DNA of 64,000 nucleotides, taken from IMG/VR virus record IMGVR_UViG_3300018962_000001, positions 124,001 through 188,000 of that record. One strand, 5' to 3'. A model generated the notes under the pieces. That model searched no databases and was not told where the DNA came from. It was given only the letters and a program-made list of their open reading frames with translations. This document shows positions 4,888 through 50,298 of the stretch, in pieces. Every line of letters begins with the position of its first letter. Positions within the stretch are counted from its first letter, which is position 1. The position numbers and the translations under genes are program-made.

Positions 4888-4910
4888 AGGGAGGTCCGTG
4901 TCGGCACTAC

Positions 4911-4987
4911 GTCCATGTAGCTTAGTTGGATAGAGCATCAGTTTGCGGAACTGAAGGCCGGGGGTTCGACTCCCTCCGTGGACGCCA
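4911..4987 (+). tRNA. trnR: tRNA-Arg (GCG)
   Basis: Acceptor GTCCATG/CGTGGAC, anticodon arm TCAGT-TTGCGGA-ACTGA, GTTCGACTC, CCA. Confidence 0.95.
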
Positions 4988-4990
4988 TGA

Positions 4991-5065
4991 TCGGTCGCAG
5001 CTCGACGGTCGAGCAACACCCTGATACGGTGCAGGCTGCTGGTTCGAATCCAGCCGACCGAACCA
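4991..5065 (+). tRNA. trnI: tRNA-Ile (GAT), atypical
   Basis: Acceptor TCGGTCG/CGACCGA, anticodon arm CACC-CTGATAC-GGTG, GTTCGAATC, ACCA; C at position 8. Confidence 0.88.
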
Positions 5066-12873: not shown

Positions 12874-12877
12874 TGCC

Positions 12878-15800
12878 TTACTCCCGTGGTTGATAGTAGC
12901 GAGCGCGGACCAGGGCGGTTGCATTTTGCTCCTGGAGCCGAACCGTCATTTGTGCGCTCATCGCAGGACTCTGCTCCTGCCGCTCCCAGGAGCGCTGCAC
13001 GCCCATGATATACAGGGGGCCATTGGTATCGTCGAGCGTGTTGGTAACCTCGACCAGATCAAACCGTTCATATTGAAGGGACGGATGCACCGGATACGCG
13101 CGCGGACGGAGACTTCGCTCAATGGTTAACAACTCTTGCCAGGCGCGCTCCCGACATTCGTCCTCATCGCGTAATCCATCAACCGAGATGACCCGCCACA
13201 GGAGTCGTCCGATTCGCTCCGCGATGGTTGGCGAGTACGCTGATCCCCAGATTTGAAGGCCACTTGCGGTTTTGGAGACGACCCGGATGGCGCACGGCAA
13301 CTGGTCATAGGCCACGCTATAGCCGCCCCCCATGATTCGCGCATCGCGCAGCGTTCCAACCGGCGTGTGGGCCAGGGTCCGCCCCACACGCAGCGTTCGT
13401 CCATCGGCGACCATCCAGGCTTGGCGACCCTCCAGCAGCGTCGTCAGATATTTATCGAGCGTTTCCCCTGGCGGAATCGGATCGTAGTTGGCGAGGCCAA
13501 GCCACGGAATGCGTACCTGATAAATCGTCGTCGTTTGATGGGTGCCACCGACCATCCCTAGTCCCGCCGAAAGACCCCAATACCCTTCGGCTACCAAGGT
13601 CTCATCGTAGAAGGTCCGGGCGAGGACGCCATTGGCGTACACGCTATACCACGGTCCATCGACGACAAAGCGAAACCATGTCCGCCCCTCCCCATTCCCA
13701 AAGATCGGCACGAGACTTTCCGACTCGGCAAATCCCACAAAGGTCGGGCCTTCCGGCTGGGGCGCGTTCACATATAAGCGGACACGCGCCCAGCGCGGAT
13801 CAGTGGCATCGACACACCCACCGCCAATGGAGATCGTGAGCAGGGCATACCGTTGTCCGTCCGGACTGGCGCGCGCCAAGATCCCAAATCCGCCGGTCCC
13901 CTCCATTTGCATATCGAGATCGATCACGAGATTCTGCGCCCAGACCCCGCTTTGCAGCCCCCAGATCCGATACATTGGAGCACGCCCAGTATCCACATAC
14001 TGGAGGCGGCCCGGATCGACACGCCAGTGGCTTTCCGCAGGCTGGCCCGCGAGATCGCGTCCGCCCAGGACCGTCCAGCCGTTCAGTGATCCCGAAGCCC
14101 AGCGCTCATCCAGCTGGGCTTCGGCGCGGAGATGGGTAAAGCCGCGTTGCGTCGCGATCCGGTGTAAGAATTCCTCAACGGTGGTTTCGCGCTCGTGACT
14201 CACGACCCGAATCATATCAAAATGTGTTGCGACTGCATAGTCGTTGATCGTAACGGGTTTTTCGGGATCATTGAGATCCTGATGGGAATACAGCGCCGTT
14301 TGGACCTCCAAGGGCGGAATCTCGACTCGAACCGCACAGTTGGCAGTGGATTGCAGCTCTCCGTAGCTCTGTCCATCTGGTCCAGCGAGCAAGACATCCA
14401 AGAGGGGCACCGGGTCCTCAATATTAATATAGGTAAATCCATCGATCTGCACGAGAATGCGGTGCATTTGGTGAGTCACTTCGACCTCATGGAATTGCGG
14501 CCAGGTCGTTTGCGCTCCCTCAATCATCGGCACGGCGCTGGATCGTGCCAGCAGGGTCCGATAGATGTTCTGCCGGAGGTCACGGGTGGCTTTGCCCGTT
14601 TGGGGATCGCGATACTCATACGTTGCTCGGACTTTCCACAGCTCCATCCCGACGCAAGTCCGCCCCCACTTCACAATATAGTATTGTGAGAAGTCGCTGG
14701 ATGCGCCGAACACAATGCCGACTGTTTGACGACCTCCCAGATCGGGATCTTCTGGCATCACCGTGATCGCATGATGCGGATGCATGGTGCGGACGTTCAC
14801 CGCAATGGTGACCCGCCCTGCCAAGCCGGTGGTAAATCCGAGCCAGTGGACACCGGGTTCCATGCCCCCCTCGTCGTGGGAAGCGGTCGTAATATACTGT
14901 TCGCCGTGCGCTTGATCATTAACCCAGCGCCATTTTGACTGGGCCACCGGCACCAGTGCTTGCAAATCCGATTCGGTATCAAAGCGATAGGTGACGCGCT
15001 CTCCCGGATCGGGCACCACAATGGCGCGATCGGTTTGGCCGTGCCGGATCTGATTGCTATAATCCGTGGCTTGTACCTGAAGGGTCCCCGCCACGTTCGC
15101 AACATCCTGGGGTCCGACCTGATCAATATGTCCTTGAAACACCCGCACAAGCTCGGTGTCTCGCCAGACTGATTCGCCGGTTGTGTACGCGCTCACCTGG
15201 GAGCCGTGTTCGAGCTGGGCTGCGTCTGCGAAAAAACTCTGGTGGAGATCCGTGACTCCGGTAAATCGCACAAAAAAGGCCGCGTGCGTCCGATCCGGCT
15301 GATCTGCCCGAAACGGGGCGGACACTCGTCGCCAGGTGCCAACTGCCTCGGCGACCAAACCGACGAGCAGCACCTGCGCCGCCGCCGCCACCGCGCCGCC
15401 GCGATACACGGCATGCAGCTCGATCGTCCCGGTGCCGGGAACTGTCTCATTGCGGACATGGATCGAGAAGGTATCGGTGACCGCAGGATCGATCGGCTGA
15501 TCCGTCACTCCGACCTGAAGAAACGTGGTTGGTTGGACCGCGATCACATGCAGCCCAACCACGCCGTCATAGGCCGCGTGGGCACTTCGCTCCAGATGAG
15601 AGGCCGAATCCCCCGTCGTCCATCCGACCGAATCTGACTCGACCGAAGGATTCCGCAGCCGGTTGACCAGCGTGCCCTGGCCGACATAGCCCGCCCGGAT
15701 CTCCAATTCTCCCCCATAGCGAACAAGGGGATGATCGTGATACAGGCGCAGCTCATTCTTCAGCGTAATATCTCCCTGTGCCGCCGCCGTTGGGTTTTCG

Positions 15801-33450: not shown

Positions 33451-33530
33451 GGCCTGGATCGGCCTGAGACGGCATCGACGGGCAAGGCACGGTTGGGCTA
33501 TCCGTGGCTAGGTATGGTTGGGCGTGGCGC
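33451..33530 (+). ncRNA. Orphan (GGY-NN)16 pentamer-tract RNA, candidate guide
   Basis: 16 in-register pentamers, 13 starting GG; flanked by promoter and terminator. Confidence 0.65.
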
Positions 33531-33559
33531 AGCACCTCACATGTGTGAGGTGCTGTTTG
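33530..33559 (+). terminator. Rho-independent terminator
   Basis: CAGCACCTCAC-ATGT-GTGAGGTGCTG-TTT. Confidence 0.75.
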
Positions 33560-33688
33560 ATTCTTGGGATGCCAACGGTGCCCCATCCGAGCCTCGCACG
33601 ATACGGATCATGTGTCGGATGGGCGAGCACGGGGGAATGGTGGCCCATATAGGAGAAGTCGGGGCAGATGCGCGGACTTCTGCCCCGT

Positions 33689-33916: not shown

Positions 33917-34924
33917 TTAAGGAGCAGTGCGCTCCGCTGCTTCGATGGTGTGAATCCCGGTGAGAAGTTGATAATACGCCAAGCTTCCAGGCTGAAATAA
34001 GAGCAGATAGCCTTGGAGCAACTCTTTCCGCGTGGCACGCGCGGGTTCTAAGGTGATGCGTGCTCGAATCAGCGCCATCCGTTCGTCATCCGTCAACTGC
34101 GGATCGGCCAGCCGATCTTCAAGCAGCAGGATCTTCTGGACGCGCGCAGCGGCAGCGAGGGCCATTGTGGTCGGCGAGATGATCGAGTCGGAGTCGTCCT
34201 CCGGTGGCGTATAAGGCCGGGGGGCAGCTAATCGGGTGGTTGGCCCCGTCGCCGGACGCAGACGTTGATAAATCTCGACCCACGACAGGCCCAACCGCCG
34301 GAGTGCGAGGATTTCCGCACGCCGGTTCGGCAGATTCTGATAGGCCACCGACTGACGCAGATCCTCCCAGAGCGGCTGAATCTCGCTGAACCACTGCTGA
34401 CGGCGGAGAACATCCTGTGGCCCCGGATCAAGCACTCGCACCTCCTCCGGCCAGAAAGCAATCGCCTGATCGATCTGGAGATTAATGAGTCCCAGTGGCA
34501 CGCCCGCAGCATCGCACTCAACACCATCTTGATCGATCCACGGCTTGTGCGGTGATCGCCGGATGAGATGGGGTTTCGTTCCCTGGATGACCGGGAAGAT
34601 CGCCGGATCGAGTGGGGGGACAAAGGCCGCATGCGACGTGGGATCATCCACGCGGGCCAGATCTGGGATCGTGTGCCCACACCCGGAACAAAACTTCGCA
34701 CCGGGTTCGATTCCACGATACCCACAGCGGGTACACTGATTTGCTGCGCGCGCGCGCTGTAGGCACTGATTTGCGAGCAATGTCCGGGACCGAAACTCTG
34801 CCAGATCAGATCGATAGAGCAGGGTGGTCCGGTAGGCTGCATACAAGGTCGCCATCAGGACTCCTACCTGAACTCCCTCACTCGAAAGATGGAATAGGAG
34901 ATCCACGAACCAATCATTCATCAC
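33917..34924 (-). CDS. Membrane-anchored Zn-ribbon protein
   Basis: N-terminal hydrophobic helix; CTRCG...GAKFCSGCG; coupled to upstream HTH gene. Confidence 0.7.
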   Translation of the reverse strand: MMNDWFVDLLFHLSSEGVQVGVLMATLYAAYRTTLLYRSDLAEFRSRTLLANQCLQRARAANQCTRCGYRGIEPGAKFCSGCGHTIPDLARVDDPTSHAAFVPPLDPAIFPVIQGTKPHLIRRSPHKPWIDQDGVECDAAGVPLGLINLQIDQAIAFWPEEVRVLDPGPQDVLRRQQWFSEIQPLWEDLRQSVAYQNLPNRRAEILALRRLGLSWVEIYQRLRPATGPTTRLAAPRPYTPPEDDSDSIISPTTMALAAAARVQKILLLEDRLADPQLTDDERMALIRARITLEPARATRKELLQGYLLLFQPGSLAYYQLLTGIHTIEAAERTAP

Positions 34925-35136
34925 TCCTCCCGTTCCTCCGGCGGCGGCGGCGCGAACAATGCCAGCAACGGCACACCGAGCGCGGCAGCCATTTTGTCAA
35001 GCGATCCGATCGTTAACGTCTCGACGTGGCGATTATGCCAGGCTTTGCGAACCGTCCCCACCCCCAGATCGGCCCGTCGTGCCAGCTTCGAGATATTTAA
35101 CGCCTGGGCGGTGGCGATAACAGCTACTTGAAACAT
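34921..35136 (-). CDS. Cro/C1-type (XRE) HTH regulator
   Basis: LNISKLARRADLGVGTVRKAW...TIGSLDKMAAALGV; AAGGAGG RBS. Confidence 0.85.
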   Translation of the reverse strand: MFQVAVIATAQALNISKLARRADLGVGTVRKAWHNRHVETLTIGSLDKMAAALGVPLLALFAPPPPEEREE

Positions 35137-35176
35137 TCGATCCTCCTTCCTCGTGTGGAGCGCGCATCATTGTGCA

Positions 35177-35260
35177 TTGACAGACCGCATATCTATGTTA
35201 TACTGTCATTATAATGTATAGTATATAGAGTATAGCATACAAAACCTATGCTACATTATA
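35177..35260. promoter_or_regulatory. AT-rich divergent promoter/operator region between HTH gene and pentamer array
   Basis: TTGACA-16-TATACT (35177-35204); near-palindrome TATACTGTCATTATAATGTATAGTATA; inverted repeat TAGCATA-N7-TATGCTA (35233-35253). Confidence 0.7.
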
Positions 35261-35309
35261 CTCCCACTCCCGGCAGAATGCTAGACATTCGACAGATGAA
35301 TTCGGACAT

Positions 35310-35710
35310 GGTTGGGTGTGGATTGGCTAGGCTAGGAGAGGCACGGTGAGGTCTGGCACGGATGACTCTGCACTGAGTCCAATCCCTTCGGGGTATCTGG
35401 GTATGGCATGGGAACGGTTGGGTCCGGTAAGGATCGGCTGGGAGCGGCAAGGTGTGGCAAGGTCGGGCTGGGCCGGGCAACGCAGGGCACGGATGGCGGT
35501 GTATTCCGCCACCATTCCCCACCAGGGGAATACGAGGATGGCTGGGCGCGGGCATGGCGAGGCGTGGCAAGTCGAGGCTGGGCCGCGCTAGGTGCGGCAA
35601 GGCACGGATGATCGTGGATTCGATCACCATCCCTCACACGAGGGTTATTTGGCTCGGATCGGTCAGGATTGGCTAGGTCAGGTGGGGCTGGGTGAGGCTT
35701 GGTTTGGTAC
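35310..35710 (+). repeat. Array 1: four (GGY-NN)n pentamer units, the first three each closed by two hairpins (candidate guide RNA array)
   Basis: Tracts of 10, 16-18, 11-13 and 12 pentamers at 35310, 35400, 35540, 35651; conserved GGCAC-GGATG-stem-TGNAYT-stem end. Confidence 0.9.
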
Positions 35711-35720
35711 AAGGAGCAGT

Positions 35721-36359
35721 ATGATGGCATCCAACATGATTCAAGCGACGGTTGAGATCCAGGGAACGAAGCCACTGTTGTGGCACGCCTTTACGCCCGA
35801 CAGCATTCCGGCGGACGGCAAGAAGGAAAAGACCGGGGTGGCGGGTAACGATCCCCAGGAATGGCGGCGATCCTTCCTGGCGGATCACGAAGGCCGCTTG
35901 TTTGTGAACCCGGAATACATCTTCGGCTGCCTGCGCGATGGCGCGCGACACACCAAAAAAGGCCGTGGATCGATTATGTCGAATGTGGCGGCAACGCTTC
36001 AGATCGTGGACGAGCGGATCTACACCGATCGCTATTTCCCACGCAACGGCGCGACTGGCCCCTTTGATCCGGCATCGGCGGATCGCCCGCCGATCGAGAT
36101 CACCGAGCCGGTTTATCTCGACGTGCGATCGGTGAAGAACCCGTCCACGAAAGGTCGGAACGTCCGCTACCGGGTGGCGGCGAGTCCAGGGTGGCGGGCG
36201 AGCTTTACGATTCTGTGGGACAAAACCATTGTCAGCCGCACCGAGATGGAGGCGGTCATTACTGATGCGGGCCGACTCGTCGGGCTGGGTGATGGCCGAT
36301 CGATCGGCTTTGGTCGATTCATGGTGGTGCCAGGGTCCATCACGTTTACCGAGGTCTAG
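35721..36359 (+). CDS. Stand-alone RAMP / Cas7-like RNA-binding protein (Vipr-like)
   Basis: AAGGAG RBS; VEIQGTKPLL (beta1), LFVNPEYIFGCLRDGA (alpha1), C-terminal Gly-rich loop GLGDGRSIGFGRF, all RAMP hallmarks; no other cas genes. Confidence 0.85.
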   Translation: MMASNMIQATVEIQGTKPLLWHAFTPDSIPADGKKEKTGVAGNDPQEWRRSFLADHEGRLFVNPEYIFGCLRDGARHTKKGRGSIMSNVAATLQIVDERIYTDRYFPRNGATGPFDPASADRPPIEITEPVYLDVRSVKNPSTKGRNVRYRVAASPGWRASFTILWDKTIVSRTEMEAVITDAGRLVGLGDGRSIGFGRFMVVPGSITFTEV

Positions 36360-36369
36360 AGTCTTTCGA

Positions 36370-36427
36370 GGCGAGGCATGGTGAGGTGAGGTATGGGGTG
36401 GTTGGCGAGGTACGGCCTGGCAAGGAG
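36370..36427 (+). repeat. Pentamer tract (unit 5) forming the leader of the HNH gene
   Basis: GGCGA GGCAT GGTGA GGTGA GGTAT GGGGT GGTT GGCGA GGTAC GGCCT GGCAA GGAG. Confidence 0.85.
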
Positions 36428-36434
36428 TTTGAAC

Positions 36435-36752
36435 ATGGGCATGAAACGACAACCTCCGAAGATCTGGGAAGGAACCCGCAAACGAATATTCGAACGCGAT
36501 CGGGGGATCTGCCAATCTCCCCTGGCTCCACCCCTGTGTCAAGGGAAACGCGGCGAGTTAACGCTTGCCACGGCGCATATCGACCACCGGCGAAGCGGTC
36601 GGTTTGGCACGAATGCGGATAGCAACCTCCGGGTGCTCTGCCGCGCGTGCCACGTCCTCCGCGACGATCCGCGCCACCGAGGCATGATCGGCGGAGCCTT
36701 GCGCGACGGGATCATCCCTCCCCATTGGCGGGAGCTAACCTGGGGAGAGTAG
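36435..36752 (+). CDS. HNH endonuclease
   Basis: RKRIFERDRGICQ...C...AHIDH......GTN.DSNLRVLCRACH. Confidence 0.9.
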   Translation: MGMKRQPPKIWEGTRKRIFERDRGICQSPLAPPLCQGKRGELTLATAHIDHRRSGRFGTNADSNLRVLCRACHVLRDDPRHRGMIGGALRDGIIPPHWRELTWGE

Positions 36753-36974
36753 ATGGGTCGTCCAAGGCACAGAACGGGTGCCGTGCGCCAGCTGCCGTGG
36801 CGCAGAGTCGTCACGGCAGCACGTGATGGCGGAATCATGGGGGCGGTGCTGGGAGGGGTGTTCTTTGGCCCTTCTGGCGCGCTGGTGACCAGCTTAGTAG
36901 GAGCGGTGGCAGCGGCGGCGGTTCGCTGGTATCGAAGCGTCAAGGCGAGAGGTCGCATGGGAAGGCATGGATGA
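36753..36974 (+). CDS. Small glycine-zipper membrane protein
   Basis: GGAG RBS, starts at HNH stop; GGIMGAVLGGVFFGPSGALVTSLVGAVAAAAV followed by basic residues. Confidence 0.6.
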   Translation: MGRPRHRTGAVRQLPWRRVVTAARDGGIMGAVLGGVFFGPSGALVTSLVGAVAAAAVRWYRSVKARGRMGRHG

Positions 36975-37325
36975 TCGTGGATCGATCCCACTTCTCGGTT
37001 GGGCAAGCGAGGGTCTGGCAAGGACAGGCAAGGCTTGGCTCGGCAGGGTCGGGTTCGGCTGGGCAAGGATACTGGTGTTTCCAGTACCATCGATTGGGTG
37101 TGGCGGGGCGGTGGTAGGGTGGGGCTTGGCTTGGTCCGGCACGGCAGGGATGATGGTGTCTCCATTCCACCTCATGGTCGGGCGAGGAGGGGCGAGGCAG
37201 GGCTAGGCGGGGCAAGGTGAGGCCCGGCAAGGTTCGGCACCGATCCTCGTGTCATCGAGGCCACCACGGGGTATGCCGAGGCGTGGTAAGGTGAGGCTAG
37301 GCTGCGGTGAGGTCCGGCGAGACGG
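36943..37325 (+). repeat. Array 2: one degenerate plus four (GGY-NN)n units with single hairpins
   Basis: Tracts at 36997 (14), 37097 (10), 37176 (13), 37270 (about 11); hairpins TACTGG-TGTTT-CCAGTA, ATGG-TGTCT-CCAT, CCTCG-TGTCAT-CGAGG. Confidence 0.9.
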
Positions 37326-37327
37326 GG

Positions 37328-37358
37328 AACAGGACGGGTGCTGGTCACCCGTCCTGTT
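37328..37358. terminator. Strong hairpin between convergent array and tail chaperone gene
   Basis: AACAGGACGGGTG-CTGGT-CACCCGTCCTGTT, 13-bp perfect stem. Confidence 0.7.
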
Positions 37359-37830
37359 GATTCTCCGGTGCCTGGTCGGCGAACTCATCAACCTTGTTGG
37401 CACGTTTGTAGGCTTGCCAGAAGGCTGACTGCATCGGCGGCGGCGGCGGCGGGGCGAATGGATCTTGATAGACCTTCTCAAACGGCGGCAGCGCCTGCGG
37501 TTTCTTGCCACCGAACGCGGGTCCAAGGACGCGGGCCAGGGCGGTTTCGAGGGCCATAATCTGACTCATTTGCTGGTCCCAGCGATTCCGCGCGACCTGC
37601 TGGTACTCGCGATGGAGTCGCCGCCACCGCCAGCCCAGCACCTCCTCCAGGGGCAAATGCCGGGTTGCCACGATCTCGGTCACCATGTCGTCGATCAGGG
37701 TGCCAATGGCTCCTATGATGTCGAAGGCGAGTTGACCACCGTTGCGCCAGCTGGTGGTGGAGTCTTGGCCGGTTGTTGATTGCGCTTGCCCCACAGCTCC
37801 ACCGCTTGCCGGGCGAGCGTGAAGTTTCCC
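37345..37830 (-). CDS. Tail assembly chaperone, -1 frameshift extension (gpGT-like T part)
   Basis: Open in the -1 frame from slippery site 37830; LPLEEVLGWRWRRL resembles gpT-type motif. Confidence 0.8.
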   Translation of the reverse strand, partial: GKLHARPASGGAVGQAQSTTGQDSTTSWRNGGQLAFDIIGAIGTLIDDMVTEIVATRHLPLEEVLGWRWRRLHREYQQVARNRWDQQMSQIMALETALARVLGPAFGGKKPQALPPFEKVYQDPFAPPPPPPMQSAFWQAYKRANKVDEFADQAPENQQDG

Positions 37831-38378
37831 AGTGCCGCTGCCAAGTCTTCGGACTGCCGGATGCGCCAGGCCAGTGCCTTCACAATCGGCGCGACCTTTA
37901 CATCGTCCTCCGACAGCTGCCGGAAAAACAACTCCGCCTCTTTCTTCTGGTGATCCTTGCCACCGAACAACACGATCGCGGCAATCCGCAAAAAGTGTTG
38001 CACATTGATGGTTGCAAGCAAGGCGAAGATCGTGGCTTCAAATGGCTGCGCCGACTGGACCTTGCCGTTCACCAGCGCTGTAAACGCACTGCCCAGCTGC
38101 CCGGCGAGGTATTTTTCAGCCCGCAACGACACGTCCCCAATCACATTACACAGTGCCAAGATCGCGTGAATATCGGGTTCTCCGATCTCAAAGACTCGTC
38201 CGCCAAAGGTGACTCGATAGTCCACCACTTCCTCGACCACCGCCTCCGTAGGCCCGTCCTCGGCAGCTGGTGGAAACAAGGGTTCATCGGGCGCAGCGAT
38301 CGGTTCCGATCCCCAGAGCGATTGGTCGTTGGGCAAGGGAGCCTGGCCCCCCAGGTCGAAGCTATTGCCGTCTGCCAT
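37713..38378 (-). CDS. Tail assembly chaperone (gpG-like)
   Basis: Directly after major tail gene; acidic N-terminus; contains slippery site. Confidence 0.8.
   Translation of the reverse strand: MADGNSFDLGGQAPLPNDQSLWGSEPIAAPDEPLFPPAAEDGPTEAVVEEVVDYRVTFGGRVFEIGEPDIHAILALCNVIGDVSLRAEKYLAGQLGSAFTALVNGKVQSAQPFEATIFALLATINVQHFLRIAAIVLFGGKDHQKKEAELFFRQLSEDDVKVAPIVKALAWRIRQSEDLAAALGNFTLARQAVELWGKRNQQPAKTPPPAGATVVNSPSTS
37824..37830 (-). other. Programmed -1 ribosomal frameshift site G GGA AAC
   Basis: X XXY YYZ heptamer in frame with gpG ORF; -1 frame continues without stop to 37345. Confidence 0.85.
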
Positions 38379-38390
38379 AGCGAATCCTTC

Positions 38391-39056
38391 TTAGGTAAGC
38401 TCAAACAAGAGTCCGAAGTCCGAGCCGTCCGTGACGCCGGGATCGGGCAGGATGTTAAAGCTAAACTCGTTCGTGGTCGTGCCACGCGATTGAATTTGGA
38501 AGTCTCCGGCGGAGGCGATCCGCGCTTTCCGCAAGAAGAACATGCGAATCTTGCCGGTCACATCATTTTGCTGGAGCACCACCAGCGGGCGCTCGATCAA
38601 GGCAGATGGCGCACCAAGCCCTACCCGTCGCTGCGCAGCGTTGGCGGGCGTCCCGCTCGGGTTTGCGGAAATCGCGGTGATCGCGCCGAGTGCCCACAAC
38701 CATTTCATACGGTCGAGACTGGTATCCATACTGGTCCCGCCGAGCGTCATGGCAAAGTTATTCGGACGACCGCCGCGCAGCGGATAATCGCGTTGATCGA
38801 TATTGATGCCGTCTTGTATATCAAAGCTGCGACCGAGCGTAATTCCATCCTCACTGGTCGCCCCGAAGTCATGATAGCCATCTTCCAGGGCGTAGCTCGT
38901 CAGATTCAGGATGTCCTCAATGTAGCGCGGCACCGCCTGAGTCGGCACCGGCGTTTCCGGCGCGACCGCGGCATAAACGAGGCGTGCCCCGCCTTGCCAG
39001 ATGCGCGCATCTGCGCTGGCATCAATACTAATGGCACTAACCAGTTGCGTTGCCAT
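38391..39056 (-). CDS. Major tail (tube) protein
   Basis: RIWQGGARL...DFGATSEDGITL...FSFNIL tube-protein pattern and position. Confidence 0.85.
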   Translation of the reverse strand: MATQLVSAISIDASADARIWQGGARLVYAAVAPETPVPTQAVPRYIEDILNLTSYALEDGYHDFGATSEDGITLGRSFDIQDGINIDQRDYPLRGGRPNNFAMTLGGTSMDTSLDRMKWLWALGAITAISANPSGTPANAAQRRVGLGAPSALIERPLVVLQQNDVTGKIRMFFLRKARIASAGDFQIQSRGTTTNEFSFNILPDPGVTDGSDFGLLFELT

Positions 39057-39069
39057 CTACTCCCTCCTT

Positions 39070-39579
39070 CTAGTCCGTTGAGTCGGTGCCACTGGTCCGA
39101 CTTCCGCGACTTCCTGCACCAGTGGCACGGGGGGGAGTTCCAGGCGTGCTACCCGGTGTGGGATCGGCGGCGGTGCTCGTGTGGACCGTACCGGGTGCGT
39201 CCACACCGCCCTGCCCAACGCTTCCGCCGCCGCCGTGTGGCGTGGTTGCGCCCGTCGTCAGCGCGGCCCCCGACTGGAGATGCGCACTGATCTCCGCGGA
39301 GTAACGCTGCTCGGCAAGCCGCCGCTGTTTCGGCGACAACCCCCGCAGCGCTTCGTCCCGGCTGGGCGGCGGCGTCGCTTCCTTGATGTGAAATTTAAAG
39401 TCAGGATGCCCGCGGAGATACTCGGCCATGTCGCCATCCACCGGAACGGCGACACCCCGCGCAAAGGTCAGGTCATCGATCTCGACCGCATCGGCGTAAA
39501 AGTGTCGCCCGGCCACGAACTCAGCCAGGTAGCTTGTGGGCTGATCCTGGGTGGGCGCATCATCTTGCTGCTTTGGCAT
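39070..39579 (-). CDS. Hypothetical neck/tail-region protein with disordered C-terminus
   Basis: ATG 39579; TFARGVAVPVDGDMAEYL small domain; G/T/P-rich tail. Confidence 0.65.
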   Translation of the reverse strand: MPKQQDDAPTQDQPTSYLAEFVAGRHFYADAVEIDDLTFARGVAVPVDGDMAEYLRGHPDFKFHIKEATPPPSRDEALRGLSPKQRRLAEQRYSAEISAHLQSGAALTTGATTPHGGGGSVGQGGVDAPGTVHTSTAADPTPGSTPGTPPRATGAGSRGSRTSGTDSTD

Positions 39580-39583
39580 CGCA

Positions 39584-40093
39584 TTATCCCATCGTTCCCA
39601 GCGCATCGCGCGCCACCTGCCGCAAACGAGCGATCGTCTCGGCCTGCGTCCGCTGCCACGCGCGTTCAATAAATGGATTGGGCCGAGTACCGGGATGATT
39701 GACCTTCCGAAAGAAGTAGATCCCCCCGGTCCCAAACGGCGCATTCGGCCATTCAAACGCCAAGGCCCGGCCACGGCGCGATCGAATGACGTGAGGCGGT
39801 GATCCTTCCACGACCAGCGGGATCAGATCGGCATGCGGGCCTTCGGCAATGATTTGTGCTTGTGCCCGACCTGGCCCGAGCGAACGAATCCGATACGTGA
39901 TCGAATCGGCCATGTGCGGATCGGCCCGATTCGCCTCAGTTCGCACACCGCGCGGCGCTTCGGCACGCAGCGCCTCCACGACTCGCTCGGCTTCTTCCCG
40001 CAGCCGTTGGATCTGGGCACGCTCTAAACTGCTGGAATACCGGGCATAGCGACCTTGCGCATCGCGGAGTCCCGTCGTCGTCAGGGTAATCAT
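39584..40093 (-). CDS. HK97 gp10-like tail completion protein
   Basis: AEAP....HMADSI...VVEGSPPHVIR...ALAF...VNHPGTRPNPFIERA. Confidence 0.85.
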   Translation of the reverse strand: MITLTTTGLRDAQGRYARYSSSLERAQIQRLREEAERVVEALRAEAPRGVRTEANRADPHMADSITYRIRSLGPGRAQAQIIAEGPHADLIPLVVEGSPPHVIRSRRGRALAFEWPNAPFGTGGIYFFRKVNHPGTRPNPFIERAWQRTQAETIARLRQVARDALGTMG

Positions 40094-40623
40094 CGCGTGT
40101 ACCTCACTTGCAGGCCGATCGTGGTTGATCCTCCGGCGAGCAGGCCCAACTCCGCGCCAATGTTCGGGCCGGTGTCCGGGCGCAGGCTCGATGCTTGGCC
40201 TTCGTCCACCGGCGGCGTGATCGACATGATCTCGTAGGGCCAGCGTGGCTCTGCGGCGAGGATCGTTTCCAGCAGGGCTTCGCCATACCGCCAGCCCATC
40301 AGGGTTGCTTCTCGTACAGTTGGTCCCAGGACCTGCCATTCCACCAGCACGCTGTGGAGCGCCAGCGCAATCTTCTGACTTGTCTGGCCCGGTAGCGGCG
40401 ACCGAGGCGCAGCGATCACGGCTACGCGCGGAAAGTCGTCGATAAACAAATCCAGCACGTTCTCCCGAAAGCCGAACGTGATCTCGGCAGGCGGGGGGAG
40501 CACAATCGGCTCACGGGCTGCCCAGCGCGTTTGCACCGTGCTCAGCCAGGTAGGCAGATCCGCGCGAATGGCCTCCTCGACGGCCCGCGCCACATACTCG
40601 GTTTGCAGCGCTGGTGTTGCCAC
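40090..40623 (-). CDS. Putative tail terminator protein
   Basis: Position, size, FPRVAVI motif. Confidence 0.65.
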   Translation of the reverse strand: MATPALQTEYVARAVEEAIRADLPTWLSTVQTRWAAREPIVLPPPAEITFGFRENVLDLFIDDFPRVAVIAAPRSPLPGQTSQKIALALHSVLVEWQVLGPTVREATLMGWRYGEALLETILAAEPRWPYEIMSITPPVDEGQASSLRPDTGPNIGAELGLLAGGSTTIGLQVRYTR

Positions 40624-45237: not shown

Positions 45238-48200
45238 TCACCTCCGTACCTGGGCGCGTGTTCGGCTGGGGAGCACCATGCTGCGACAACGATGGCTGAC
45301 CACTGCTGCGCGCATCCGCAGATCACGCACGACGGCGCGAATTGGGAGCGCGAGCGTCGGGATCGCGCCCTGAAGATCGCCTGCCACGACCGCAAAACTG
45401 AGCACGGCGTGGCCGATCGATCGACTCAGCACCTGCCCGGCCCGCAGGGAAGCCTCCACGCTGAGCACGACCAACAGCGCACGCTGTCGGTGCGCTGTCG
45501 CGCCTGGCCCGACATCAAGCGCGATTCCGGCAGTCACCGATCGATACCCCGCACGTCGGGTGCCAGCAGCAATGATACTCGGTGCTGCGCTGACCAGGCT
45601 CCGAGCCACCGTGCTTTTGGCATGGAGGCTTCCCGTTCCAGCGGCGGTGCTGGTGAGCTGCCGCTGGGAATCTCGTCGCACCTGGGCGGTCATCAGATCG
45701 AGGACGCTTATCGCAATCGTATGCCCCCGCGCACTGATTCGATCGACGGTCCCCTGTACCGGGCCATGCCATCCACCAGGCCGGTGCGATTCTTGTGCCC
45801 GCGCGCCGGTGATGGTGGTGGCATGATCCACCTCGCCGAACCGAGTAGCCCCACCCCGACGCAGCACGTGGGCTTCCCCAACGACCCCCGCCGACACTCC
45901 CTGCCGGACCAGTGCTTGCCGGGCCAGCTGGAGACCGGTCTCCAGCGGAACGCCGAGACCGCGCACGGTGCTTGCCTGCGACCCAATCACAGCCTCAGCT
46001 TCCGCGTCCACCGTCCCGCTTCGATCGCGTCGACTCCACCGTTCAGCAAAGGTGCTCCCCGGAATAACGAATCCCGCATGGCGGGCACTTTGCCCCCCCG
46101 GACTCACCAGCGGGACCGCTGCCAGGCTGTCGCTCACGGCCCGAATCAGGCGTTGATCGCCACGCAGCCACGCCACCGCCAGCGCCCCCCACGGAGCTGC
46201 GCGACCAAAGCCCCGTCGCGTCGCGCTGGCCGGGTCGATCCCTTGGCTCACTGAGGGCGCGCGCGCGAGGATCTGGCGGCCTCCGGTTGTCGCGACCGGA
46301 GCAATTGCCTCTGCCACCCACTGGATCATGGTTGTGACTCGATCCCCGATCGTGGTTGTGACGATGGCGATCGGAGCCGTGCGGCGCTGGGCAAGGATGC
46401 GCGTCCCAACACTCATGACTCCCGTACCCCAGCCTGGCACACGGCGCACGGCCTGATGGGCCGCGAGGCCGATCGCTGGAAGATTTGCAGTTGCCGTTTG
46501 GCGAGACGCCGCCGTTCCCGCAGCGATGCCGGTGCCGATCGGCATCACTTGACTACGCAGGCGGGTTAACGCTTGGGCAGTGCGTAGCAGGCCGATCCCT
46601 GGCAGGTCCAGTAGCACGCCCCGCAGCGCCTCACGGCGCTGGGTAAGTCCGGCGGCGGCGGCGGCGATCGCCATGATCCCCCGGCGAATCGTTTGCTGTC
46701 CGCCCAGCGCGAGGGTGCTGCCGGTTCCCGCCGCGATCTGGCGCTGGGTCATGGTGCGATACCCAAGCCCACTGTTCGCCGCCTGGGTGCTGCCGATCCC
46801 GCGCAGGCCGTGGGTCATACGACTCGTGGTCATGGTGATGGGGACGGGCACCGCTGGGACCTTCAGTGCGTGTCCGCCTTTTGCCAGAGGGACCCCGATC
46901 TCGGTGGCGATTGCCACCGAGCGCGTCACCACTTGGCCCGCAGCAACGGTTGTATAATCGAGGTGATAGTCGTCAACATCAAAGATTTGCTGGGTTCCCG
47001 CAGGGACATTATCGATCTGCAAGGCGGCAACAATCCGGGGTGAGTTCCACATATCCACCACGCCCGGATAGCTTTCGTTCAGGACAAACAGCACGCCATC
47101 CGAAAGAAGCCAGCGGTAGGTAATCTGGTCATTCGCGATGTCCACAACAAACTCCAGGCGATGCCATACATCTGGGTCTAGCTCCTGCGTGAATCCATAG
47201 GCTTGCTCCGTTGAGGGCCGGTTGGCATCCCAGCCACGAGTCGCGCCAAACGGTCGCCAGTGCCGCGTTGGCGCGGTGATGATGTACGTAAAGGCAGCCT
47301 CCAAGCGCCGTCCCTGCTGGTACACCGAAAACGGAAACTCGACGGCTTGCGGGGCATTGACCGTGCCCGCATAGCGCCAGTTGATCCGGTAGATCCATCG
47401 CACGGCATCGACCCACGGAAGATCCTGGTACCGATACACATTGACATAGACCGGCTCACTCCCCGTATTGACCCCACCTGAGGTGGTGATTTCGATTTGA
47501 TAGATCTGTCCATCGCCCGATGGAGCCGATGCGTCCGCGACGATTCGATGGGTCTGCGTCATCGTATAGCCGGGCGACCCATCATTCGGGTTGAAGGTTG
47601 TGAGCGCGCCGTGAGTCCAAAATGCCTCGGTGTAGAGTTTCCATGCACTCAGCGCCGCCTGATCCAGCGGACCAAAAAATCCCTGGCTGCTACTGTCTCG
47701 CCGGGTCAGCGCTCCACTTGCAGGGAGGTTGACCCCTCCAGCGCGCTGGAGTGCCCGCCGCCCAATAGGCAGAGCGGCACTGTTTGCGAGGGTTGTGACT
47801 GCCTGGCGGCGTGCGGCGATCGTCCGCCAGATGCCGCGACTTCCGGGCAGCAACACACTGAGTTGTTTCGTGGCCTGGCCGCGCAGGCTTAACGCGGCCA
47901 GGGCTGGCCCGACCCAGGAGCCAGCAAGATGGGCACCTATGCGACGGACCAGCAGGCCGTTAACAGGGATGATGTGGTCCACCCCGCGCGGCTGTCCGAT
48001 CCTCCGCCCAGCACTCGTCTCCAAGGCGATCGAGGTCGTGGCAGCGCGCGTGATCGCGTTGCCAGCCGCAGGCGGGGCATTTAGATTGTCAAAGCTCGCG
48101 GTGTAGGCAGCGGCAGCGGCTCCCGCCGAGGACGTGCGTGCCCCAAATTGGACATATACCGACTCCAGCTCCGCGCCGGTGAGGATGGAGGTACTTTTCC

Positions 48201-50298
48201 ACGCGGTTGTCCCATCCGGCAAGGCATCAGGATGACTCCAGGTCAGCCCGTCTGCCGATACATCTCCATACAGAACCCCCGCCGTTTCCCGAATCCGCCA
48301 CCATCGATGGGCTGCCTCCTGGTAGCTGATCGTAATCGCTCCAATCCCGGTTTGCTGCCATTCCAGCGCCTGGGTATTCCCGTTATACTGAATCCAGACC
48401 GCATCCGCACTGGGATTGACGACCGCGGTTGCTTGCACCCGCAGCAGCACCCGCACGTTCGTTGTTGCGACTAAGGGGAGCACTTCCACGTGAATCGCTT
48501 GGCCGGTCAGGCGATAGGCGCTCGCAGAGGTGTAATAGCCGTAGTCACTCCCTGCTCCGGCGGAGGAAAGACTGATCTGAAGAACGGCTCCCGTTTCTGT
48601 CAGCGTTGGGGTTGCTGTCTTGTGGACGGTCCACATCGGACTCGCCACCGTGTCACTAAACGTATCGACCAGGCTTCCAAGGTTGGCGGTACTACTCATC
48701 ATCTGGATCGTCGGTTCGACGCCAACACCCACCGCCGGACCGATAAAGGCACCGCGCGCCACCGAGTCGATCGAATTTACTCCCAGAGACGCATTCCCGC
48801 TGATCAGCGCTCCTCGGCCAGTGCTTCGGATCGGTGCGGGTCCTGCCGTGGCGGGTATCGCGACGGTGCTGGATCGTGGATAGGCGGATCGATCGCCAAG
48901 TCCTGATGTGTTTGGCGAGGCAATCGTGCTGGCACGGCGAATACTAACGCCCACGCCAACACCGGGGGTGACACTGACTCCGACCGTTGGCTGACGGATG
49001 ACCGCCGTGGCTCCGGCGGCGGCCTCCTTATAGGTCACAATACCGCCAATCCAGGTTGCCGTGGCCGACAGGGTAAAGCCCACGGTTTCCGCTGCCCCAC
49101 CCACAAGGTCGCGGGTCCCCACGGTTAACGCGGCAGTCGTGGCGTCAGGATAACTCCCGCGACTCGCGTATGGACTGGCAACGCTGACCGACGCGACGGT
49201 CGCCGCATTCGCCAGCAGGCCGATCGCGAGGCGATTGCCACTGCCAAGGGCGGCACTGGTCGTCGCACTCGCAGCAGTCCCCATCCCGCCGCTGAACCCC
49301 GTGCGATCAACGGGATTGGTTGTGGCAATGCCAACAAACTCAAATGCGATGATCGAAAGATTGCCGGACCCAGCGCCACGCTGCACGGTGATCAAGGGAT
49401 TCGTGGTTGTCTGATTGTTTGCGTAGCGCCAGATCTGAATTTCATCACTCCCGCTAACCTGAACAAAATCGCGCGTGAAGCCGAGACCGCTGTTGTAGCT
49501 GACACTGGTAATCTCACTGGTTCCCGACATGCGATTATTCAGGGCGACGATCAGGGACGATCCTGATCGCGCGGCTTGCGGGAAGGAAAGGTTAAAGGTC
49601 GTGGTCGAGATTCCCTGGTTCCGGGCGGATTGGCAGAGGCCAAACGCACTGGGGGTCGCTGGGACGAGAAACACCGTGAGTCCACTATAGGCTCCGCTTC
49701 CCGCGTCATGCGATCGTGATCCGGTGACTCCTTCGGCAAGATCGTAGCCATACGCGACAAACTGGCGGCAATGAGCCGTGGTGGTCCCACCACTATTTTG
49801 ATCGGTCTCCTTGAACATCCGCCAATCCGCGGTGTACGTCGTGCCGGGCACCGCGCTCGTCTCTACCGTTAACCGCATCGCGCCGCGATAGCCAAGCCCT
49901 GCCCCATTGGTGGCAGCCGCATCCGTATGGGTGGTTCCGGTGGTACCACTGTACGACAAGAGACCGACCGCGCGCGCGCCCGCCGTGGTGAGCACGCCAG
50001 AGATCCCGCAACATGACCAGACACCGCGGCCCGATGTTCCCCAGGAAATGACGGGCGCGGCGGCGTTCCAGGCCGCTGAGAACAGCGCGGTACAGGTGGC
50101 GTTCGTCGAATCCTGGACCTGGCCTTCCTTGGTCCATCCGGTCGTTGCCGTTGTCACGGTGATGGCCGTGCTCGTTTTGATCGACACAAACACCCACAGC
50201 GTATCCTCGCTTGTCAGTGCAGGCGAGGATGGCAACGTGGGCGTTACCGACGCGGCGCTGAAGGTGCCCGTGGTTTTGTTTTTATGGCGAATGGGCAC
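45238..50298 (-). CDS. Giant (1686 aa) virion appendage protein: beta-sandwich, LamG-like and jelly-roll domains separated by 20-aa periodic spacers
   Basis: WWRIRETAGVLYGDVSADGLTW LamG-like motif; 5+6+26 twenty-residue units starting with Arg. Confidence 0.8.
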   Translation of the reverse strand: MPIRHKNKTTGTFSAASVTPTLPSSPALTSEDTLWVFVSIKTSTAITVTTATTGWTKEGQVQDSTNATCTALFSAAWNAAAPVISWGTSGRGVWSCCGISGVLTTAGARAVGLLSYSGTTGTTHTDAAATNGAGLGYRGAMRLTVETSAVPGTTYTADWRMFKETDQNSGGTTTAHCRQFVAYGYDLAEGVTGSRSHDAGSGAYSGLTVFLVPATPSAFGLCQSARNQGISTTTFNLSFPQAARSGSSLIVALNNRMSGTSEITSVSYNSGLGFTRDFVQVSGSDEIQIWRYANNQTTTNPLITVQRGAGSGNLSIIAFEFVGIATTNPVDRTGFSGGMGTAASATTSAALGSGNRLAIGLLANAATVASVSVASPYASRGSYPDATTAALTVGTRDLVGGAAETVGFTLSATATWIGGIVTYKEAAAGATAVIRQPTVGVSVTPGVGVGVSIRRASTIASPNTSGLGDRSAYPRSSTVAIPATAGPAPIRSTGRGALISGNASLGVNSIDSVARGAFIGPAVGVGVEPTIQMMSSTANLGSLVDTFSDTVASPMWTVHKTATPTLTETGAVLQISLSSAGAGSDYGYYTSASAYRLTGQAIHVEVLPLVATTNVRVLLRVQATAVVNPSADAVWIQYNGNTQALEWQQTGIGAITISYQEAAHRWWRIRETAGVLYGDVSADGLTWSHPDALPDGTTAWKSTSILTGAELESVYVQFGARTSSAGAAAAAYTASFDNLNAPPAAGNAITRAATTSIALETSAGRRIGQPRGVDHIIPVNGLLVRRIGAHLAGSWVGPALAALSLRGQATKQLSVLLPGSRGIWRTIAARRQAVTTLANSAALPIGRRALQRAGGVNLPASGALTRRDSSSQGFFGPLDQAALSAWKLYTEAFWTHGALTTFNPNDGSPGYTMTQTHRIVADASAPSGDGQIYQIEITTSGGVNTGSEPVYVNVYRYQDLPWVDAVRWIYRINWRYAGTVNAPQAVEFPFSVYQQGRRLEAAFTYIITAPTRHWRPFGATRGWDANRPSTEQAYGFTQELDPDVWHRLEFVVDIANDQITYRWLLSDGVLFVLNESYPGVVDMWNSPRIVAALQIDNVPAGTQQIFDVDDYHLDYTTVAAGQVVTRSVAIATEIGVPLAKGGHALKVPAVPVPITMTTSRMTHGLRGIGSTQAANSGLGYRTMTQRQIAAGTGSTLALGGQQTIRRGIMAIAAAAAGLTQRREALRGVLLDLPGIGLLRTAQALTRLRSQVMPIGTGIAAGTAASRQTATANLPAIGLAAHQAVRRVPGWGTGVMSVGTRILAQRRTAPIAIVTTTIGDRVTTMIQWVAEAIAPVATTGGRQILARAPSVSQGIDPASATRRGFGRAAPWGALAVAWLRGDQRLIRAVSDSLAAVPLVSPGGQSARHAGFVIPGSTFAERWSRRDRSGTVDAEAEAVIGSQASTVRGLGVPLETGLQLARQALVRQGVSAGVVGEAHVLRRGGATRFGEVDHATTITGARAQESHRPGGWHGPVQGTVDRISARGHTIAISVLDLMTAQVRRDSQRQLTSTAAGTGSLHAKSTVARSLVSAAPSIIAAGTRRAGYRSVTAGIALDVGPGATAHRQRALLVVLSVEASLRAGQVLSRSIGHAVLSFAVVAGDLQGAIPTLALPIRAVVRDLRMRAAVVSHRCRSMVLPSRTRAQVRR

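What the first reader, a model, noticed from the sequence alone, without database searches (positions are those of the whole stretch)
35551..37299. Two distant units share the NN string while the scaffold triplets drift
Seen: U3 (35551-35580) ggcAT ggcGA ggcGT ggcAA gtcGA ggcTG and U10 (37270-37299) ggtAT gccGA ggcGT ggtAA ggtGA ggcTA share 11 of 12 dinucleotide bases (AT GA GT AA GA T). They differ at 5 of 18 triplet bases and diverge completely afterwards. Inference: the dinucleotides are the constrained, information-bearing part. The two units may be descendants of one guide aimed at related targets, or recombinants showing how new guides arise without a Cas1-Cas2 adaptation module.
Basis: partly seen in the sequence, partly recalled or inferred. 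Interest (0 to 1): 0.7.

Follow-up and report, generated by a model that had tools for sequence, protein, structure and literature searches.

The report
Two VIPR phage guides share half
The two units are guide RNAs of a VIPR system, a phage RNA-guided DNA-targeting system first described in 2026 preprints, and they share their first five and a half "letter pairs" more than chance predicts. The pairs do carry the targeting information, but why these two guides overlap remains unsolved.

Summary
Window 35551-35580 and 37270-37299 agree at 11 of 12 NN bases and differ at 5 of 18 scaffold bases. After that they agree at 4 of 12, which is chance level. Locus-wide shuffles give P about 0.003 for a run of 11 matches, and 0.01-0.02 for at least 11 of 12.

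The thing itself is already described. It is a VIPR locus (bioRxiv 10.64898/2026.04.26.720920) in a complete 205-kb biocrust phage:
- a promoter;
- four GGYNN tracts;
- vipr, a 211-aa RAMP protein;
- one more GGYNN tract;
- an HNH accessory gene;
- five more units;
- a terminator.

The protein's best AlphaFold DB matches include all five founding Vipr entries.

The claim that NN carries the information is supported, both by the literature and directly here. A neighbouring guide (36997-37061) decodes by the published one-base-skip rule to the antisense of the conserved motif HDRLDNFWF-x-L-x-H of ImmA/IrrE regulator genes. It matched at least 120 bacterial genomes where about 17 were expected, and 117 of 120 were in the wobble frame.

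The "descendants or recombinants" idea is unproven. No target was found for either unit. The free scaffold position (Y3) is no more alike than in random pairs, which argues against a recent copy. Twenty-eight related loci show no similar sharing. This is a new member of a known kind.

The parts
35177..35204 (+). Sigma-70-like promoter of the VIPR operon (TTGACA, 16 nt, TATACT, with TG). It faces away from a Cro/CI-type HTH gene at 34921-35136 on the minus strand.
   Evidence: 11 of 12 consensus matches; HTH_26.
35305..35399 (+). vrRNA unit A1: 12 GGYNN pentamers ending in ggcAC ggaTG, followed by a tail.
35400..35539 (+). vrRNA unit A2: 3 pentamers, a one-base register slip, 16 pentamers, then a tail of two hairpins (35491-35513 and 35514-35531).
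It has two leading pentamers and an extra G. The guide body of 10 units is at 35551-35600. The tail-embedded units ggcAC ggaTG follow. Hairpins lie at 35606-35628 and 35631-35644. The shared block is 35551-35580.
   Evidence: Tail-embedded units are taken as non-guide by analogy with C1.
35651..35710 (+). Tract A4: 12 pentamers without a tail, running straight into the vipr ribosome-binding site (aaggag, 35711-35716).
35724..36359 (+). vipr: a 211-aa RAMP protein with a glycine-rich loop (GLGDGRSIGFGRF).
   Evidence: no Pfam hit; phrog_4652; 1473 homologues. (model pLDDT 86.6). (Csm3/Cmr4/Cas7 fold, E 4e-9). (matches all five founding Vipr AFDB entries).
36370..36428 (+). Tract B1: 11 pentamers between vipr and the HNH gene, ending in the HNH ribosome-binding site.
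   Evidence: The same layout is seen in L001 and L002.
36435..36752 (+). HNH endonuclease gene, the vipr-accessory (vap) gene of this clade.
   Evidence: PF01844 and HNH PHROGs; a homologue lies directly downstream of vipr in 44 of 56 related viral loci.
36753..36974 (+). 73-aa ORF with a glycine-rich hydrophobic stretch. It is unclear whether this is a real gene. Its 3' end overlaps the degenerate unit C0 (36944-36996).
36997..37091 (+). vrRNA unit C1: a guide body of 13 units (36997-37061), two tail-embedded units, and a hairpin at 37067-37088. The guide is antisense to the ImmA/IrrE motif HDRLDNFWF-x-L-x-H.
37092..37175 (+). vrRNA unit C2: 4 pentamers, a one-base slip, 8 pentamers, then a tail.
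37176..37269 (+). vrRNA unit C3: 13-14 pentamers and a tail hairpin (CCTCG/CGAGG).
It has 7 pentamers, one extra C, then 5 pentamers. The guide body is about 37270-37320. Its tail is the operon's strong terminator hairpin (37323-37367, -31 kcal/mol, z -4.2). The shared block is 37270-37299.
33481..33566 (+). Solitary vrRNA-like unit O0, outside the operon: about 10 pentamers plus a terminator hairpin. Its 3' flank (CTGTTTGATTCT) resembles that of C4.

Best explanation
The region is a VIPR (Viral Interference Programmable Repeat) locus of a 205-kb phage. One promoter drives an operon holding about ten vrRNA units, the RAMP gene vipr and an HNH accessory gene.

How it works, from published work on other VIPR systems:
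- One Vipr protomer binds each pentamer.
- It buries G1, G2 and a pyrimidine at position 3.
- It presents N4 and N5, which pair with double-stranded DNA while every third target base is skipped.
- Specificity therefore lies wholly in the NN string, and position 3 is free to toggle between C and T.

U3 (A3) and U10 (C4) are two such guides. Each has ten guide units counted from a GGGYAT hexamer. They share the tail-distal (5') five and a half units and differ in the tail-proximal half, where R-loops nucleate in the studied system. They must therefore bind different sites.

The most likely reason for the shared string is that the two guides are matched to two related targets carrying the same 17-bp gapped motif, for example one conserved protein motif in two diverged homologues. 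NN would then be held by selection for target match while the scaffold is unconstrained at Y3. Whether the pair arose from an old common ancestor or independently cannot be told.

Shown: the locus anatomy, the RAMP fold, family membership, the above-chance sharing, and the code working for guide C1.
Inferred: expression and processing, the targets of A3 and C4, and the reason for the sharing.

My odds: VIPR identity and NN as specificity, about 0.95. Sharing is not chance, about 0.8. Related targets rather than an in-register recombinant, about 0.55 against 0.2.
For: Locus and family:
- GGYNN tracts occur only on the + strand around the gene.
- The same module (vipr, tract, HNH, tract) appears in phage contigs of 35-68% GC.
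- The protein has a RAMP fold. Its top AFDB matches are X1U2U4, A0A0F9A1L0, A0A1F4YLN4, A0A661D0E2 and A0A2D6XG06. These are the founding Vipr entries listed in the paper's Methods.
- There is no Cas1 in the complete genome.
- Tails form a GG-A-6-bp-stem hairpin with compensatory stem changes: UGGCGG/CCGCCA, UGAUCG/CGAUCA, UACUGG/CCAGUA.

The code:
- Literature.
- Here, 18 specified bases of C1 hit at least 120 genome stretches where about 17 were expected. Of these, 117 of 120 lie antisense in ImmA/IrrE genes with the skip at the wobble position, and 118 of 120 match at least 80% of 26 NN bases.
- A viral contig also matches at 24 of 26.

The sharing: P 0.003-0.02. Both blocks start at the same landmark.

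Against a recent copy: Y3 identity is 3 of 6 in the shared block, where roughly 0.4 per position is expected from the composition.
Against: - No target was found for A3 or C4. Searches covered the phage's own genome, 54 related loci, IMG/VR exact seeds, a metagenome seed, the 120 ImmA loci and 406 genomes.
- Collection scans accept exact seeds only, so imperfect targets would be missed.
- Significance rests on one pair and a window chosen after the fact.
- C4 looks atypical. It has a terminator instead of the usual tail hairpin, a mid-guide extra base, and two off-consensus scaffolds. It may be a decaying or non-functional unit.
- No RNA data exist for this phage. Expression and the ends of the units are inferred.
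Confidence: 0.6

Rival explanations
1. In-register recombinant or partial duplication. Because every unit carries GGY every five bases, unequal crossing-over or replication slippage between guide cassettes could have joined the 5' half of an A3-like guide to a different 3' half. That would create a new guide without any Cas1-Cas2 machinery.
For: - The identity stops abruptly after unit 6. The 3' halves agree at 4 of 12, which is chance level.
- Both guides have the same length and the same starting landmark.
- The 3' units of C4 (GA CC GA GG AC) loosely resemble those of neighbouring C3 (GA CC AA TC AC), at 7 of 10.
- In-register change does occur in this family. A whole-unit insertion or deletion separates the orthologous arrays of L184 and L186. 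Arrays are entirely replaced between L006 and L196 although their Vipr proteins are 90% identical.
- The VIPR preprints do not address how guides arise.
Against: - Y3 in the shared block is no more alike than random (3 of 6), so any exchange is not recent.
- The C3-C4 resemblance is not significant (about 0.7 expected by chance).
- 28 other loci of the family show no excess of within-locus NN sharing. Their P values look uniform and the smallest is 0.033.
Confidence: 0.2
2. Coincidence. The shared run is a chance match among many short, compositionally biased NN strings, picked out after the fact.
For: - The NN composition is skewed: TG, AA and GA make up 36% of units.
- In shuffles the best six-unit pair already reaches 9-10 of 12 as a rule.
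- The window length was chosen post hoc.
- No functional correlate (a target) was found.
Against: - Only 0.27% of shuffles give a run of 11, and 1-2% reach 11 of 12.
- The blocks begin at the same structural landmark in both units, which the shuffles do not credit.
Confidence: 0.17
3. Not guides at all. The GGYNN tracts would be protein-binding or structural repeats, such as a TRAP-like triplet-repeat leader, G-quadruplex-forming DNA, or packaging or replication iterons. Under this reading the NN similarity has no coding meaning.
For: - The period-5 G-rich tracts resemble TRAP sites and two-tetrad quadruplex motifs (my own knowledge).
- Tracts A4 and B1 lack tails and run into ribosome-binding sites, which could be regulatory.
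Against: - The adjacent protein is a RAMP whose closest structural matches are the founding Vipr entries.
- The one-base-skip decoding of C1 gives a conserved protein motif in the wobble frame in 117 of 120 hits. No structural-repeat model predicts that.
- The strand bias is strict.
Confidence: 0.03

Closest known systems
VIPR systems (Vipr RAMP, vrRNA and vap) of Escherichia phage SUSP1 and a Pseudomonas fulva prophage. Sources: bioRxiv 10.64898/2026.04.26.720920, 10.64898/2026.04.26.720927 and 10.64898/2026.10.15.759431.
   Same: - A small RAMP protein of about 200 aa next to tracts of GGY/NN pentamers.
- Ten to thirteen guide units followed by a structured 3' tail.
- Units both upstream and downstream of the genes.
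- A two-gene vipr-vap core, phage-borne, with no Cas1.
- At least one guide obeys the one-base-skip rule with the skip at the codon wobble position, and hits a lysogeny-type regulator gene.
- No self-targets.
   Different: - The protein is too diverged for BLAST against isolated phages and is only 22% identical to X1U2U4.
- The accessory gene is an HNH nuclease, not the DNA-binding vap1 of SUSP1.
- The tail is a simple bulged hairpin or a terminator, not the SUSP1 pseudoknot. A pseudoknot was not tested here.
- The array is large (about ten units).
- One-base register slips (hexamer units) occur inside tracts.
- Two tail-less tracts run into ribosome-binding sites.
- The paper ties nuclease-bearing types to host defence islands. 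This one sits in a complete 205-kb phage and in 44 other viral contigs.
- The exact type (I-VII) cannot be assigned without the paper's tree. Type III is my guess, from its HNH example.
Class 1 CRISPR-Cas backbone proteins (Cas7 family: Csm3, Cmr4, type VII Cas7, gRAMP)
   Same: RRM core, glycine-rich loop and thumb. Foldseek E values are 4e-9 to 1e-7 against Csm3 and Cmr4. The protein polymerises along a guide RNA and flips bases out at a fixed period (literature).
   Different: - No CRISPR repeat-spacer array.
- No Cas1.
- The period is 5 nt on the RNA with 3 bases flipped out, rather than 6 with 1.
- The guide is not contiguous.
- TM-scores are only about 0.5.
TRAP (trp RNA-binding attenuation protein) binding sites in Bacillus: triplet repeats with 2-3-nt spacers
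   Same: A conserved triplet plus a two-base spacer repeated about 11 times in a transcript leader (my own knowledge).
   Different: In TRAP sites the spacer carries no information and the protein is an unrelated 11-mer ring. Here the spacer dinucleotides encode a DNA target.

Membership tests
VIPR system | A Vipr protein: a single-RRM RAMP with a glycine-rich loop and a thumb, related to the founding Vipr entries | tested here: met
   - The model has pLDDT 86.6.
- PDB search gives 193 RAMP matches at E <= 1e-3.
- AFDB ranks 2-5 and 10 are X1U2U4, A0A0F9A1L0, A0A1F4YLN4, A0A661D0E2 and A0A2D6XG06. These are the five entries named in the paper's Methods.
- The motif GDGRxIGxGRF is conserved across the family; several of its residues are invariant in the alignment.
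VIPR system | vrRNA genes: tandem YNNGG/GGYNN pentamers, 9-16 per guide, flanking vipr on its strand | tested here: met
   - About 137 pentamers in 11 units, all on the + strand. G1 is G in 94%, G2 in 93%, and position 3 is a pyrimidine in 84%.
- Guide bodies have 10-16 units.
- The same tracts occur in about 40 of 54 related loci.
VIPR system | A conserved structured 3' tail after the repeat tract | tested here: met
   A GG-A-6-bp-stem hairpin with compensatory changes in A2, A3 and C1, variants of it in A1, C2 and C3, and terminator hairpins in C4 and O0. A pseudoknot like that of SUSP1 was not tested.
VIPR system | An adjacent vipr-accessory (vap) gene with a DNA-related function | tested here: met
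   An HNH gene at 36435-36752. A homologue lies directly downstream of vipr in 44 of 56 related loci.
VIPR system | NN strings match natural DNA targets with one skipped base per unit, the skip falling on codon wobble positions, and there are no self-targets | tested here: met
   - Met for guide C1.
- No self-target for any guide.
- Not met, or not found, for A3 and C4, the two units of the finding.
VIPR system | vrRNAs are expressed, processed to about 100 nt and bound by Vipr. The complex then binds DNA and silences the target. | not testable with these tools
   Only DNA runs hold this phage. A near-consensus promoter and a terminator bracket the operon.
CRISPR-Cas (class 1) | A repeat-spacer array and the adaptation genes cas1 and cas2 | tested here: not met
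   No Cas1 in the complete 204,685-bp genome, with a control that found it in 7 of 14 reference genomes. No long direct-repeat array was found, only pentamer tracts. Cas2 was not searched.
TRAP-like attenuation leader | Triplet repeats bound by a ring protein, with spacers that carry no information | tested here: not met
   The spacer dinucleotides of C1 decode a conserved protein motif in 117 of 120 genome hits. The neighbouring protein is a RAMP.

The most novel reading that the evidence does not exclude
The A3/C4 pair, together with the whole-unit insertion or deletion and the wholesale array replacement seen between close relatives, is a trace of how VIPR guides are made. The GGY scaffold every five bases would act as built-in micro-homology, letting guide halves be shuffled in register between cassettes. 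This would be a recombinational way of generating new specificities without an adaptation module. The VIPR preprints do not address how guides originate.
Probability: 0.2. Interest if true: 0.65.

Novelty: new member of a known kind. Interest (0 to 1): 0.4.

Why it matters
VIPR is a newly described kind of RNA-guided DNA recognition, and how its guides originate and turn over is not addressed in the three preprints read here.

This locus adds four things:
- A large, clean example from a complete environmental jumbo-size phage, in a clade whose accessory gene is an HNH nuclease. That shows nuclease-linked VIPR is also phage-borne.
- A guide whose wobble-skipping code lets it match one conserved ImmA/IrrE protein motif across more than a hundred bacterial species.
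- An internal calibration: the two tail-embedded units are not part of the guide.
- One statistically supported case of two guides sharing half their code.

The last point is the finding itself. It is a lead on guide evolution, not a result.

Tried and rejected
- The nearest Vipr homologue among 5.8 billion proteins is 67% identical, and the nearest among the IMG/VR loci fetched is about 63% identical.
- The only other sample holding this phage carries an identical sequence, with no variant letters.
- Surrogate pairs elsewhere in the family gave too few changes to decide. L184 against L186 has 2 Y3 changes, 1 N4 change and 1 whole-unit insertion or deletion. L005, L194 and L195 against L191 and L192 have 1 N4 change. 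L006 against L196 have entirely different arrays.

Target searches for A3 and C4:
- Own genome: best scores equal the shuffled-guide maxima.
- 54 relatives' loci: nothing.
- IMG/VR with A3 units 1-8 gave 6 hits, and with units 5-12 gave 5 hits. All extended at chance level.
The best was L166, at 22 of 24 if a two-base skip is allowed at the extra C. The skip falls on codon position 1, and about 0.1 such hits are expected by chance, so I treat it as chance.
- Metagenomes with A3 units 1-9 gave 11 hits. L202 matches 22 of 22 consecutive NN bases, but it lies antisense in a cellular aminotransferase-like gene with the skip on codon position 1, and the chance of such a hit is about 0.15-0.2. I treat it as chance.
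- The 120 ImmA loci: only C1 hits them.
- Five genomes with the best C1 targets, and 401 further genomes (the class of a Caulobacter hit, presumably Alphaproteobacteria), with up to 2-3 mismatches allowed: none.
- Exact-seed scans are insensitive to imperfect targets, so these negatives are weak.

Other checks that led nowhere:
- Guides C3 and A2 in IMG/VR gave chance-level extensions.
- The A3/C4 string was not found among 151 arrays (1344 units) of other loci.
- tblastn of Vipr against 50,697 isolated phages gave no hit.
- Rfam found only three tRNAs in the window.
- Minus-strand ORFs across the tracts (35256-35630 and 36539-37165) were rejected as coding. A period of 5 is incompatible with codons.
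Full report
**The observation**

I read 34800-38200 directly and parsed the pentamers. Window 35551-35580 reads ggcAT ggcGA ggcGT ggcAA gtcGA ggcTG. Window 37270-37299 reads ggtAT gccGA ggcGT ggtAA ggtGA ggcTA. Three scaffold differences are C/T changes at position 3, and two are at position 2.

The next six units agree at 4 of 12 NN bases, which is chance level. So "diverge completely" is fair statistically.

This is the best pair among the 3066 in-register six-unit window pairs of the locus. Shuffling NN among about 137 pentamers reaches 11 of 12 in 1.0-1.9% of trials. A run of 11 consecutive matches occurs in 0.27% of trials. The sharing is therefore above chance, though moderately, and the window length was chosen after the fact.

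Both blocks begin at a GGGYAT hexamer (82% identity over 38 nt). Both guides also have ten units before the tail-embedded ones.

**What the region is**

GGYNN runs occur only on the + strand and cluster at 33.5 kb and 35.3-37.3 kb. The layout, in order:
- a near-consensus promoter at 35177-35204;
- units A1-A3, each a pentamer tract ending in ggcAC ggaTG plus hairpins;
- a tail-less tract A4 running into the ribosome-binding site of a 211-aa gene (35724-36359);
- tract B1 running into the ribosome-binding site of an HNH gene (36435-36752);
- a 73-aa ORF;
- units C0-C4;
- a strong terminator.

The 211-aa protein has no Pfam family but 1473 homologues. Its predicted structure (pLDDT 86.6) has the Cas7/Csm3 RAMP fold. 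The same module (protein, tract, HNH, tract) recurs in viral contigs of 35-68% GC. The HNH gene lies directly downstream of vipr in 44 of 56 loci. The window lies in a complete, linear 204,685-bp virus record from a biocrust metagenome.

**It is a known kind of system**

A literature search found three 2026 preprints on VIPR systems. According to them:
- A phage-borne ancestral RAMP (Vipr) polymerises one protomer per pentamer on vrRNAs of 9-16 GGY/NN repeats with a structured 3' tail.
- G1, G2 and a pyrimidine at position 3 are buried in the protein.
- N4 and N5 pair with double-stranded DNA while every third target base is skipped. That skipped base is usually the codon wobble position.
- Accessory vap genes vary, and there is no Cas1-Cas2.

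Membership is strong. The best AlphaFold DB cluster matches of my model, after a 55%-identical fragment, are X1U2U4, A0A0F9A1L0, A0A1F4YLN4 and A0A661D0E2, with A0A2D6XG06 at rank 10. These are precisely the five founding entries listed in the paper's Methods. No Cas1 is present in the genome.

The tails fold as a GG-A-six-base-pair hairpin with compensatory stem changes between units.

The clade is distant from the studied ones. There was no tblastn hit in 50,697 isolated phages, and identity to X1U2U4 is 22%. Its HNH accessory gene suggests the paper's nuclease-bearing types, probably type III. That is my inference, because the type tree is not available. The paper links those types to host defence islands, whereas this locus and its 44 relatives are viral.

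**The code tested here**

None of the guides matches the phage's own genome above shuffled-guide levels, as published for other VIPRs.

Guide C1 (36997-37061, 13 units) gave one outstanding hit among 14 exact-seed hits in IMG/VR. It matches 24 of 26 NN bases in a 63%-GC viral contig. The site is antisense to an HTH plus Peptidase_M78 (ImmA/IrrE) gene, with the skipped base on the wobble position.

I expect about 17 by chance. Of these:
- 117 of 120 lie in the antisense wobble frame of ImmA/IrrE genes, at the motif LRHDRLDNFWF-x-L-x-HE;
- 118 of 120 match at least 80% of the 26 NN bases.

So the NN string of C1 is a wobble-free antisense copy of a conserved protein motif, next to the catalytic HExxH of a family of lysogeny-switch regulators.

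It also calibrates the units. C1's last two pentamers, which sit in the tail hairpin, never match. By analogy, the guide bodies of A3 and C4 are ten units each.

By analogy with published targets, C1 would silence an anti-repressor-type gene of resident prophages or other mobile elements, or, with the HNH nuclease, cut it. That step is inferred.

**Why do A3 and C4 share half their code?**

In the studied system R-loops nucleate next to the tail and grow towards the 5' end. A3 and C4 differ in the nucleating half and share the distal half. They must therefore bind different sites that have a 17-bp gapped motif in common.

I could not find those sites. The searches covered the phage's own genome, 54 related loci, exact seeds in IMG/VR and the metagenome collection, the 120 ImmA loci and 406 bacterial genomes. 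They gave only chance-level hits. Two superficially striking matches, L166 (22 of 24) and L202 (22 of 22 consecutive), have the skip on codon position 1, and their estimated chance expectations are 0.1-0.2. Exact-seed scans miss imperfect targets, so these negatives are weak.

Several facts bear on origin:
- Position 3 of the scaffold, which the protein lets toggle between C and T, is identical in only 3 of the 6 shared units. That is no better than random pairs, so a recent duplication or gene conversion is unlikely.
- The pattern fits either an old split with NN held by selection, or two guides independently matched to related targets.
- An in-register recombinant remains possible. The identity ends abruptly. 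Close relatives elsewhere differ by a whole-unit insertion or deletion (L184 against L186). Arrays are wholly replaced at 90% Vipr identity (L006 against L196).
- Within-locus sharing is not a family habit. 28 other loci give uniform-looking P values. The A3/C4 string occurs in none of 151 other arrays.

**The proposed rate test**

No diverged orthologue of this locus exists in the collections. The second sample that holds the phage has an identical sequence. The few changes in surrogate pairs number 2 at Y3, 2 at NN, none at G1 or G2, and one unit insertion or deletion. These are too few to compare rates.

**Verdict**

- The thing is a VIPR locus and so already a described kind. This is a new, distant, HNH-linked, phage-borne member with an unusually large array.
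- The interpretation that NN is the information is right.
- The evolutionary reading of the pair is open.

Noticed in passing
window 36997-37061; L223:12322-12365; L248-L367: Guide C1 is an antisense, wobble-skipping copy of the conserved ImmA/IrrE (Peptidase_M78) motif HDRLDNFWF-x-L-x-H. It matches at least 117 genes in genomes of many phyla, plus one 63%-GC viral contig. Its two tail-embedded units never match.
   Followed up: yes
window 33481-33566: A solitary vrRNA-like unit lies outside the operon: about 10 pentamers followed by a terminator hairpin. Its 3' flank resembles that of C4. It overlaps the nominal TTG start of the 2576-aa minus-strand ORF.
   Followed up: partly
window 35651-35716 and 36370-36428; L001:6726-6805; L002:1556-1650: Pentamer tracts without tails run straight into the ribosome-binding sites of vipr and of the HNH gene, here and in relatives. 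Vipr binding to its own mRNA leaders could regulate translation. This is speculation.
   Followed up: no
window 35410-35415, 35550, 37112, 37305; also L006, L184, L196: One-base register slips (hexamer units, often GGGNNN) interrupt the tracts, mostly two to four units from the 5' end. They recur in other loci of the family. Their effect on targeting or processing is unknown.
   Followed up: partly
window 37216-37240 and L010 from 4083: Five 3' units of guide C3 (GA CC AA TC AC) are shared with a guide of an unrelated phage contig. That is 10 consecutive NN bases, equal to the maximum seen in 60 shuffles. It may point to a common conserved target.
   Followed up: partly
L184 and L186 (arrays about 370-500 nt after vipr); L006 and L196: Orthologous arrays from Vipr proteins 95% identical differ by a whole-pentamer insertion or deletion plus three point changes. 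At 90% protein identity the guide content is entirely different, while the tail-adjacent sequence is kept.
   Followed up: partly
window 36753-36974: A 73-aa ORF with a glycine-rich hydrophobic segment abuts the HNH stop codon (TAGATG). The degenerate unit C0 overlaps its 3' end. It is unclear whether this is a real gene.
   Followed up: no
window 6949-33485 and 45238-50298 (minus strand): Five very large ORFs of 1426-2576 aa. The 2576-aa one carries Peptidase_M23 and SLT domains. Three of the others had no Pfam hit, and the 1991-aa one (6949-12924) was not scanned. Tail genes lie at 38391-40339.
   Followed up: partly
window 4508-5065: Three phage-encoded tRNA genes: Asp-GTC, Arg-GCG and Ile-GAT.
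   Followed up: no
L202:813-848 and L166:8891-8927: Near-perfect gapped matches to A3 (22 of 22 consecutive NN bases) and to C4 (22 of 24, allowing a two-base skip). I judged both compatible with chance, because the skip falls on codon position 1 and 0.1-0.2 such hits are expected. They are worth re-checking in an exhaustive search.
   Followed up: partly
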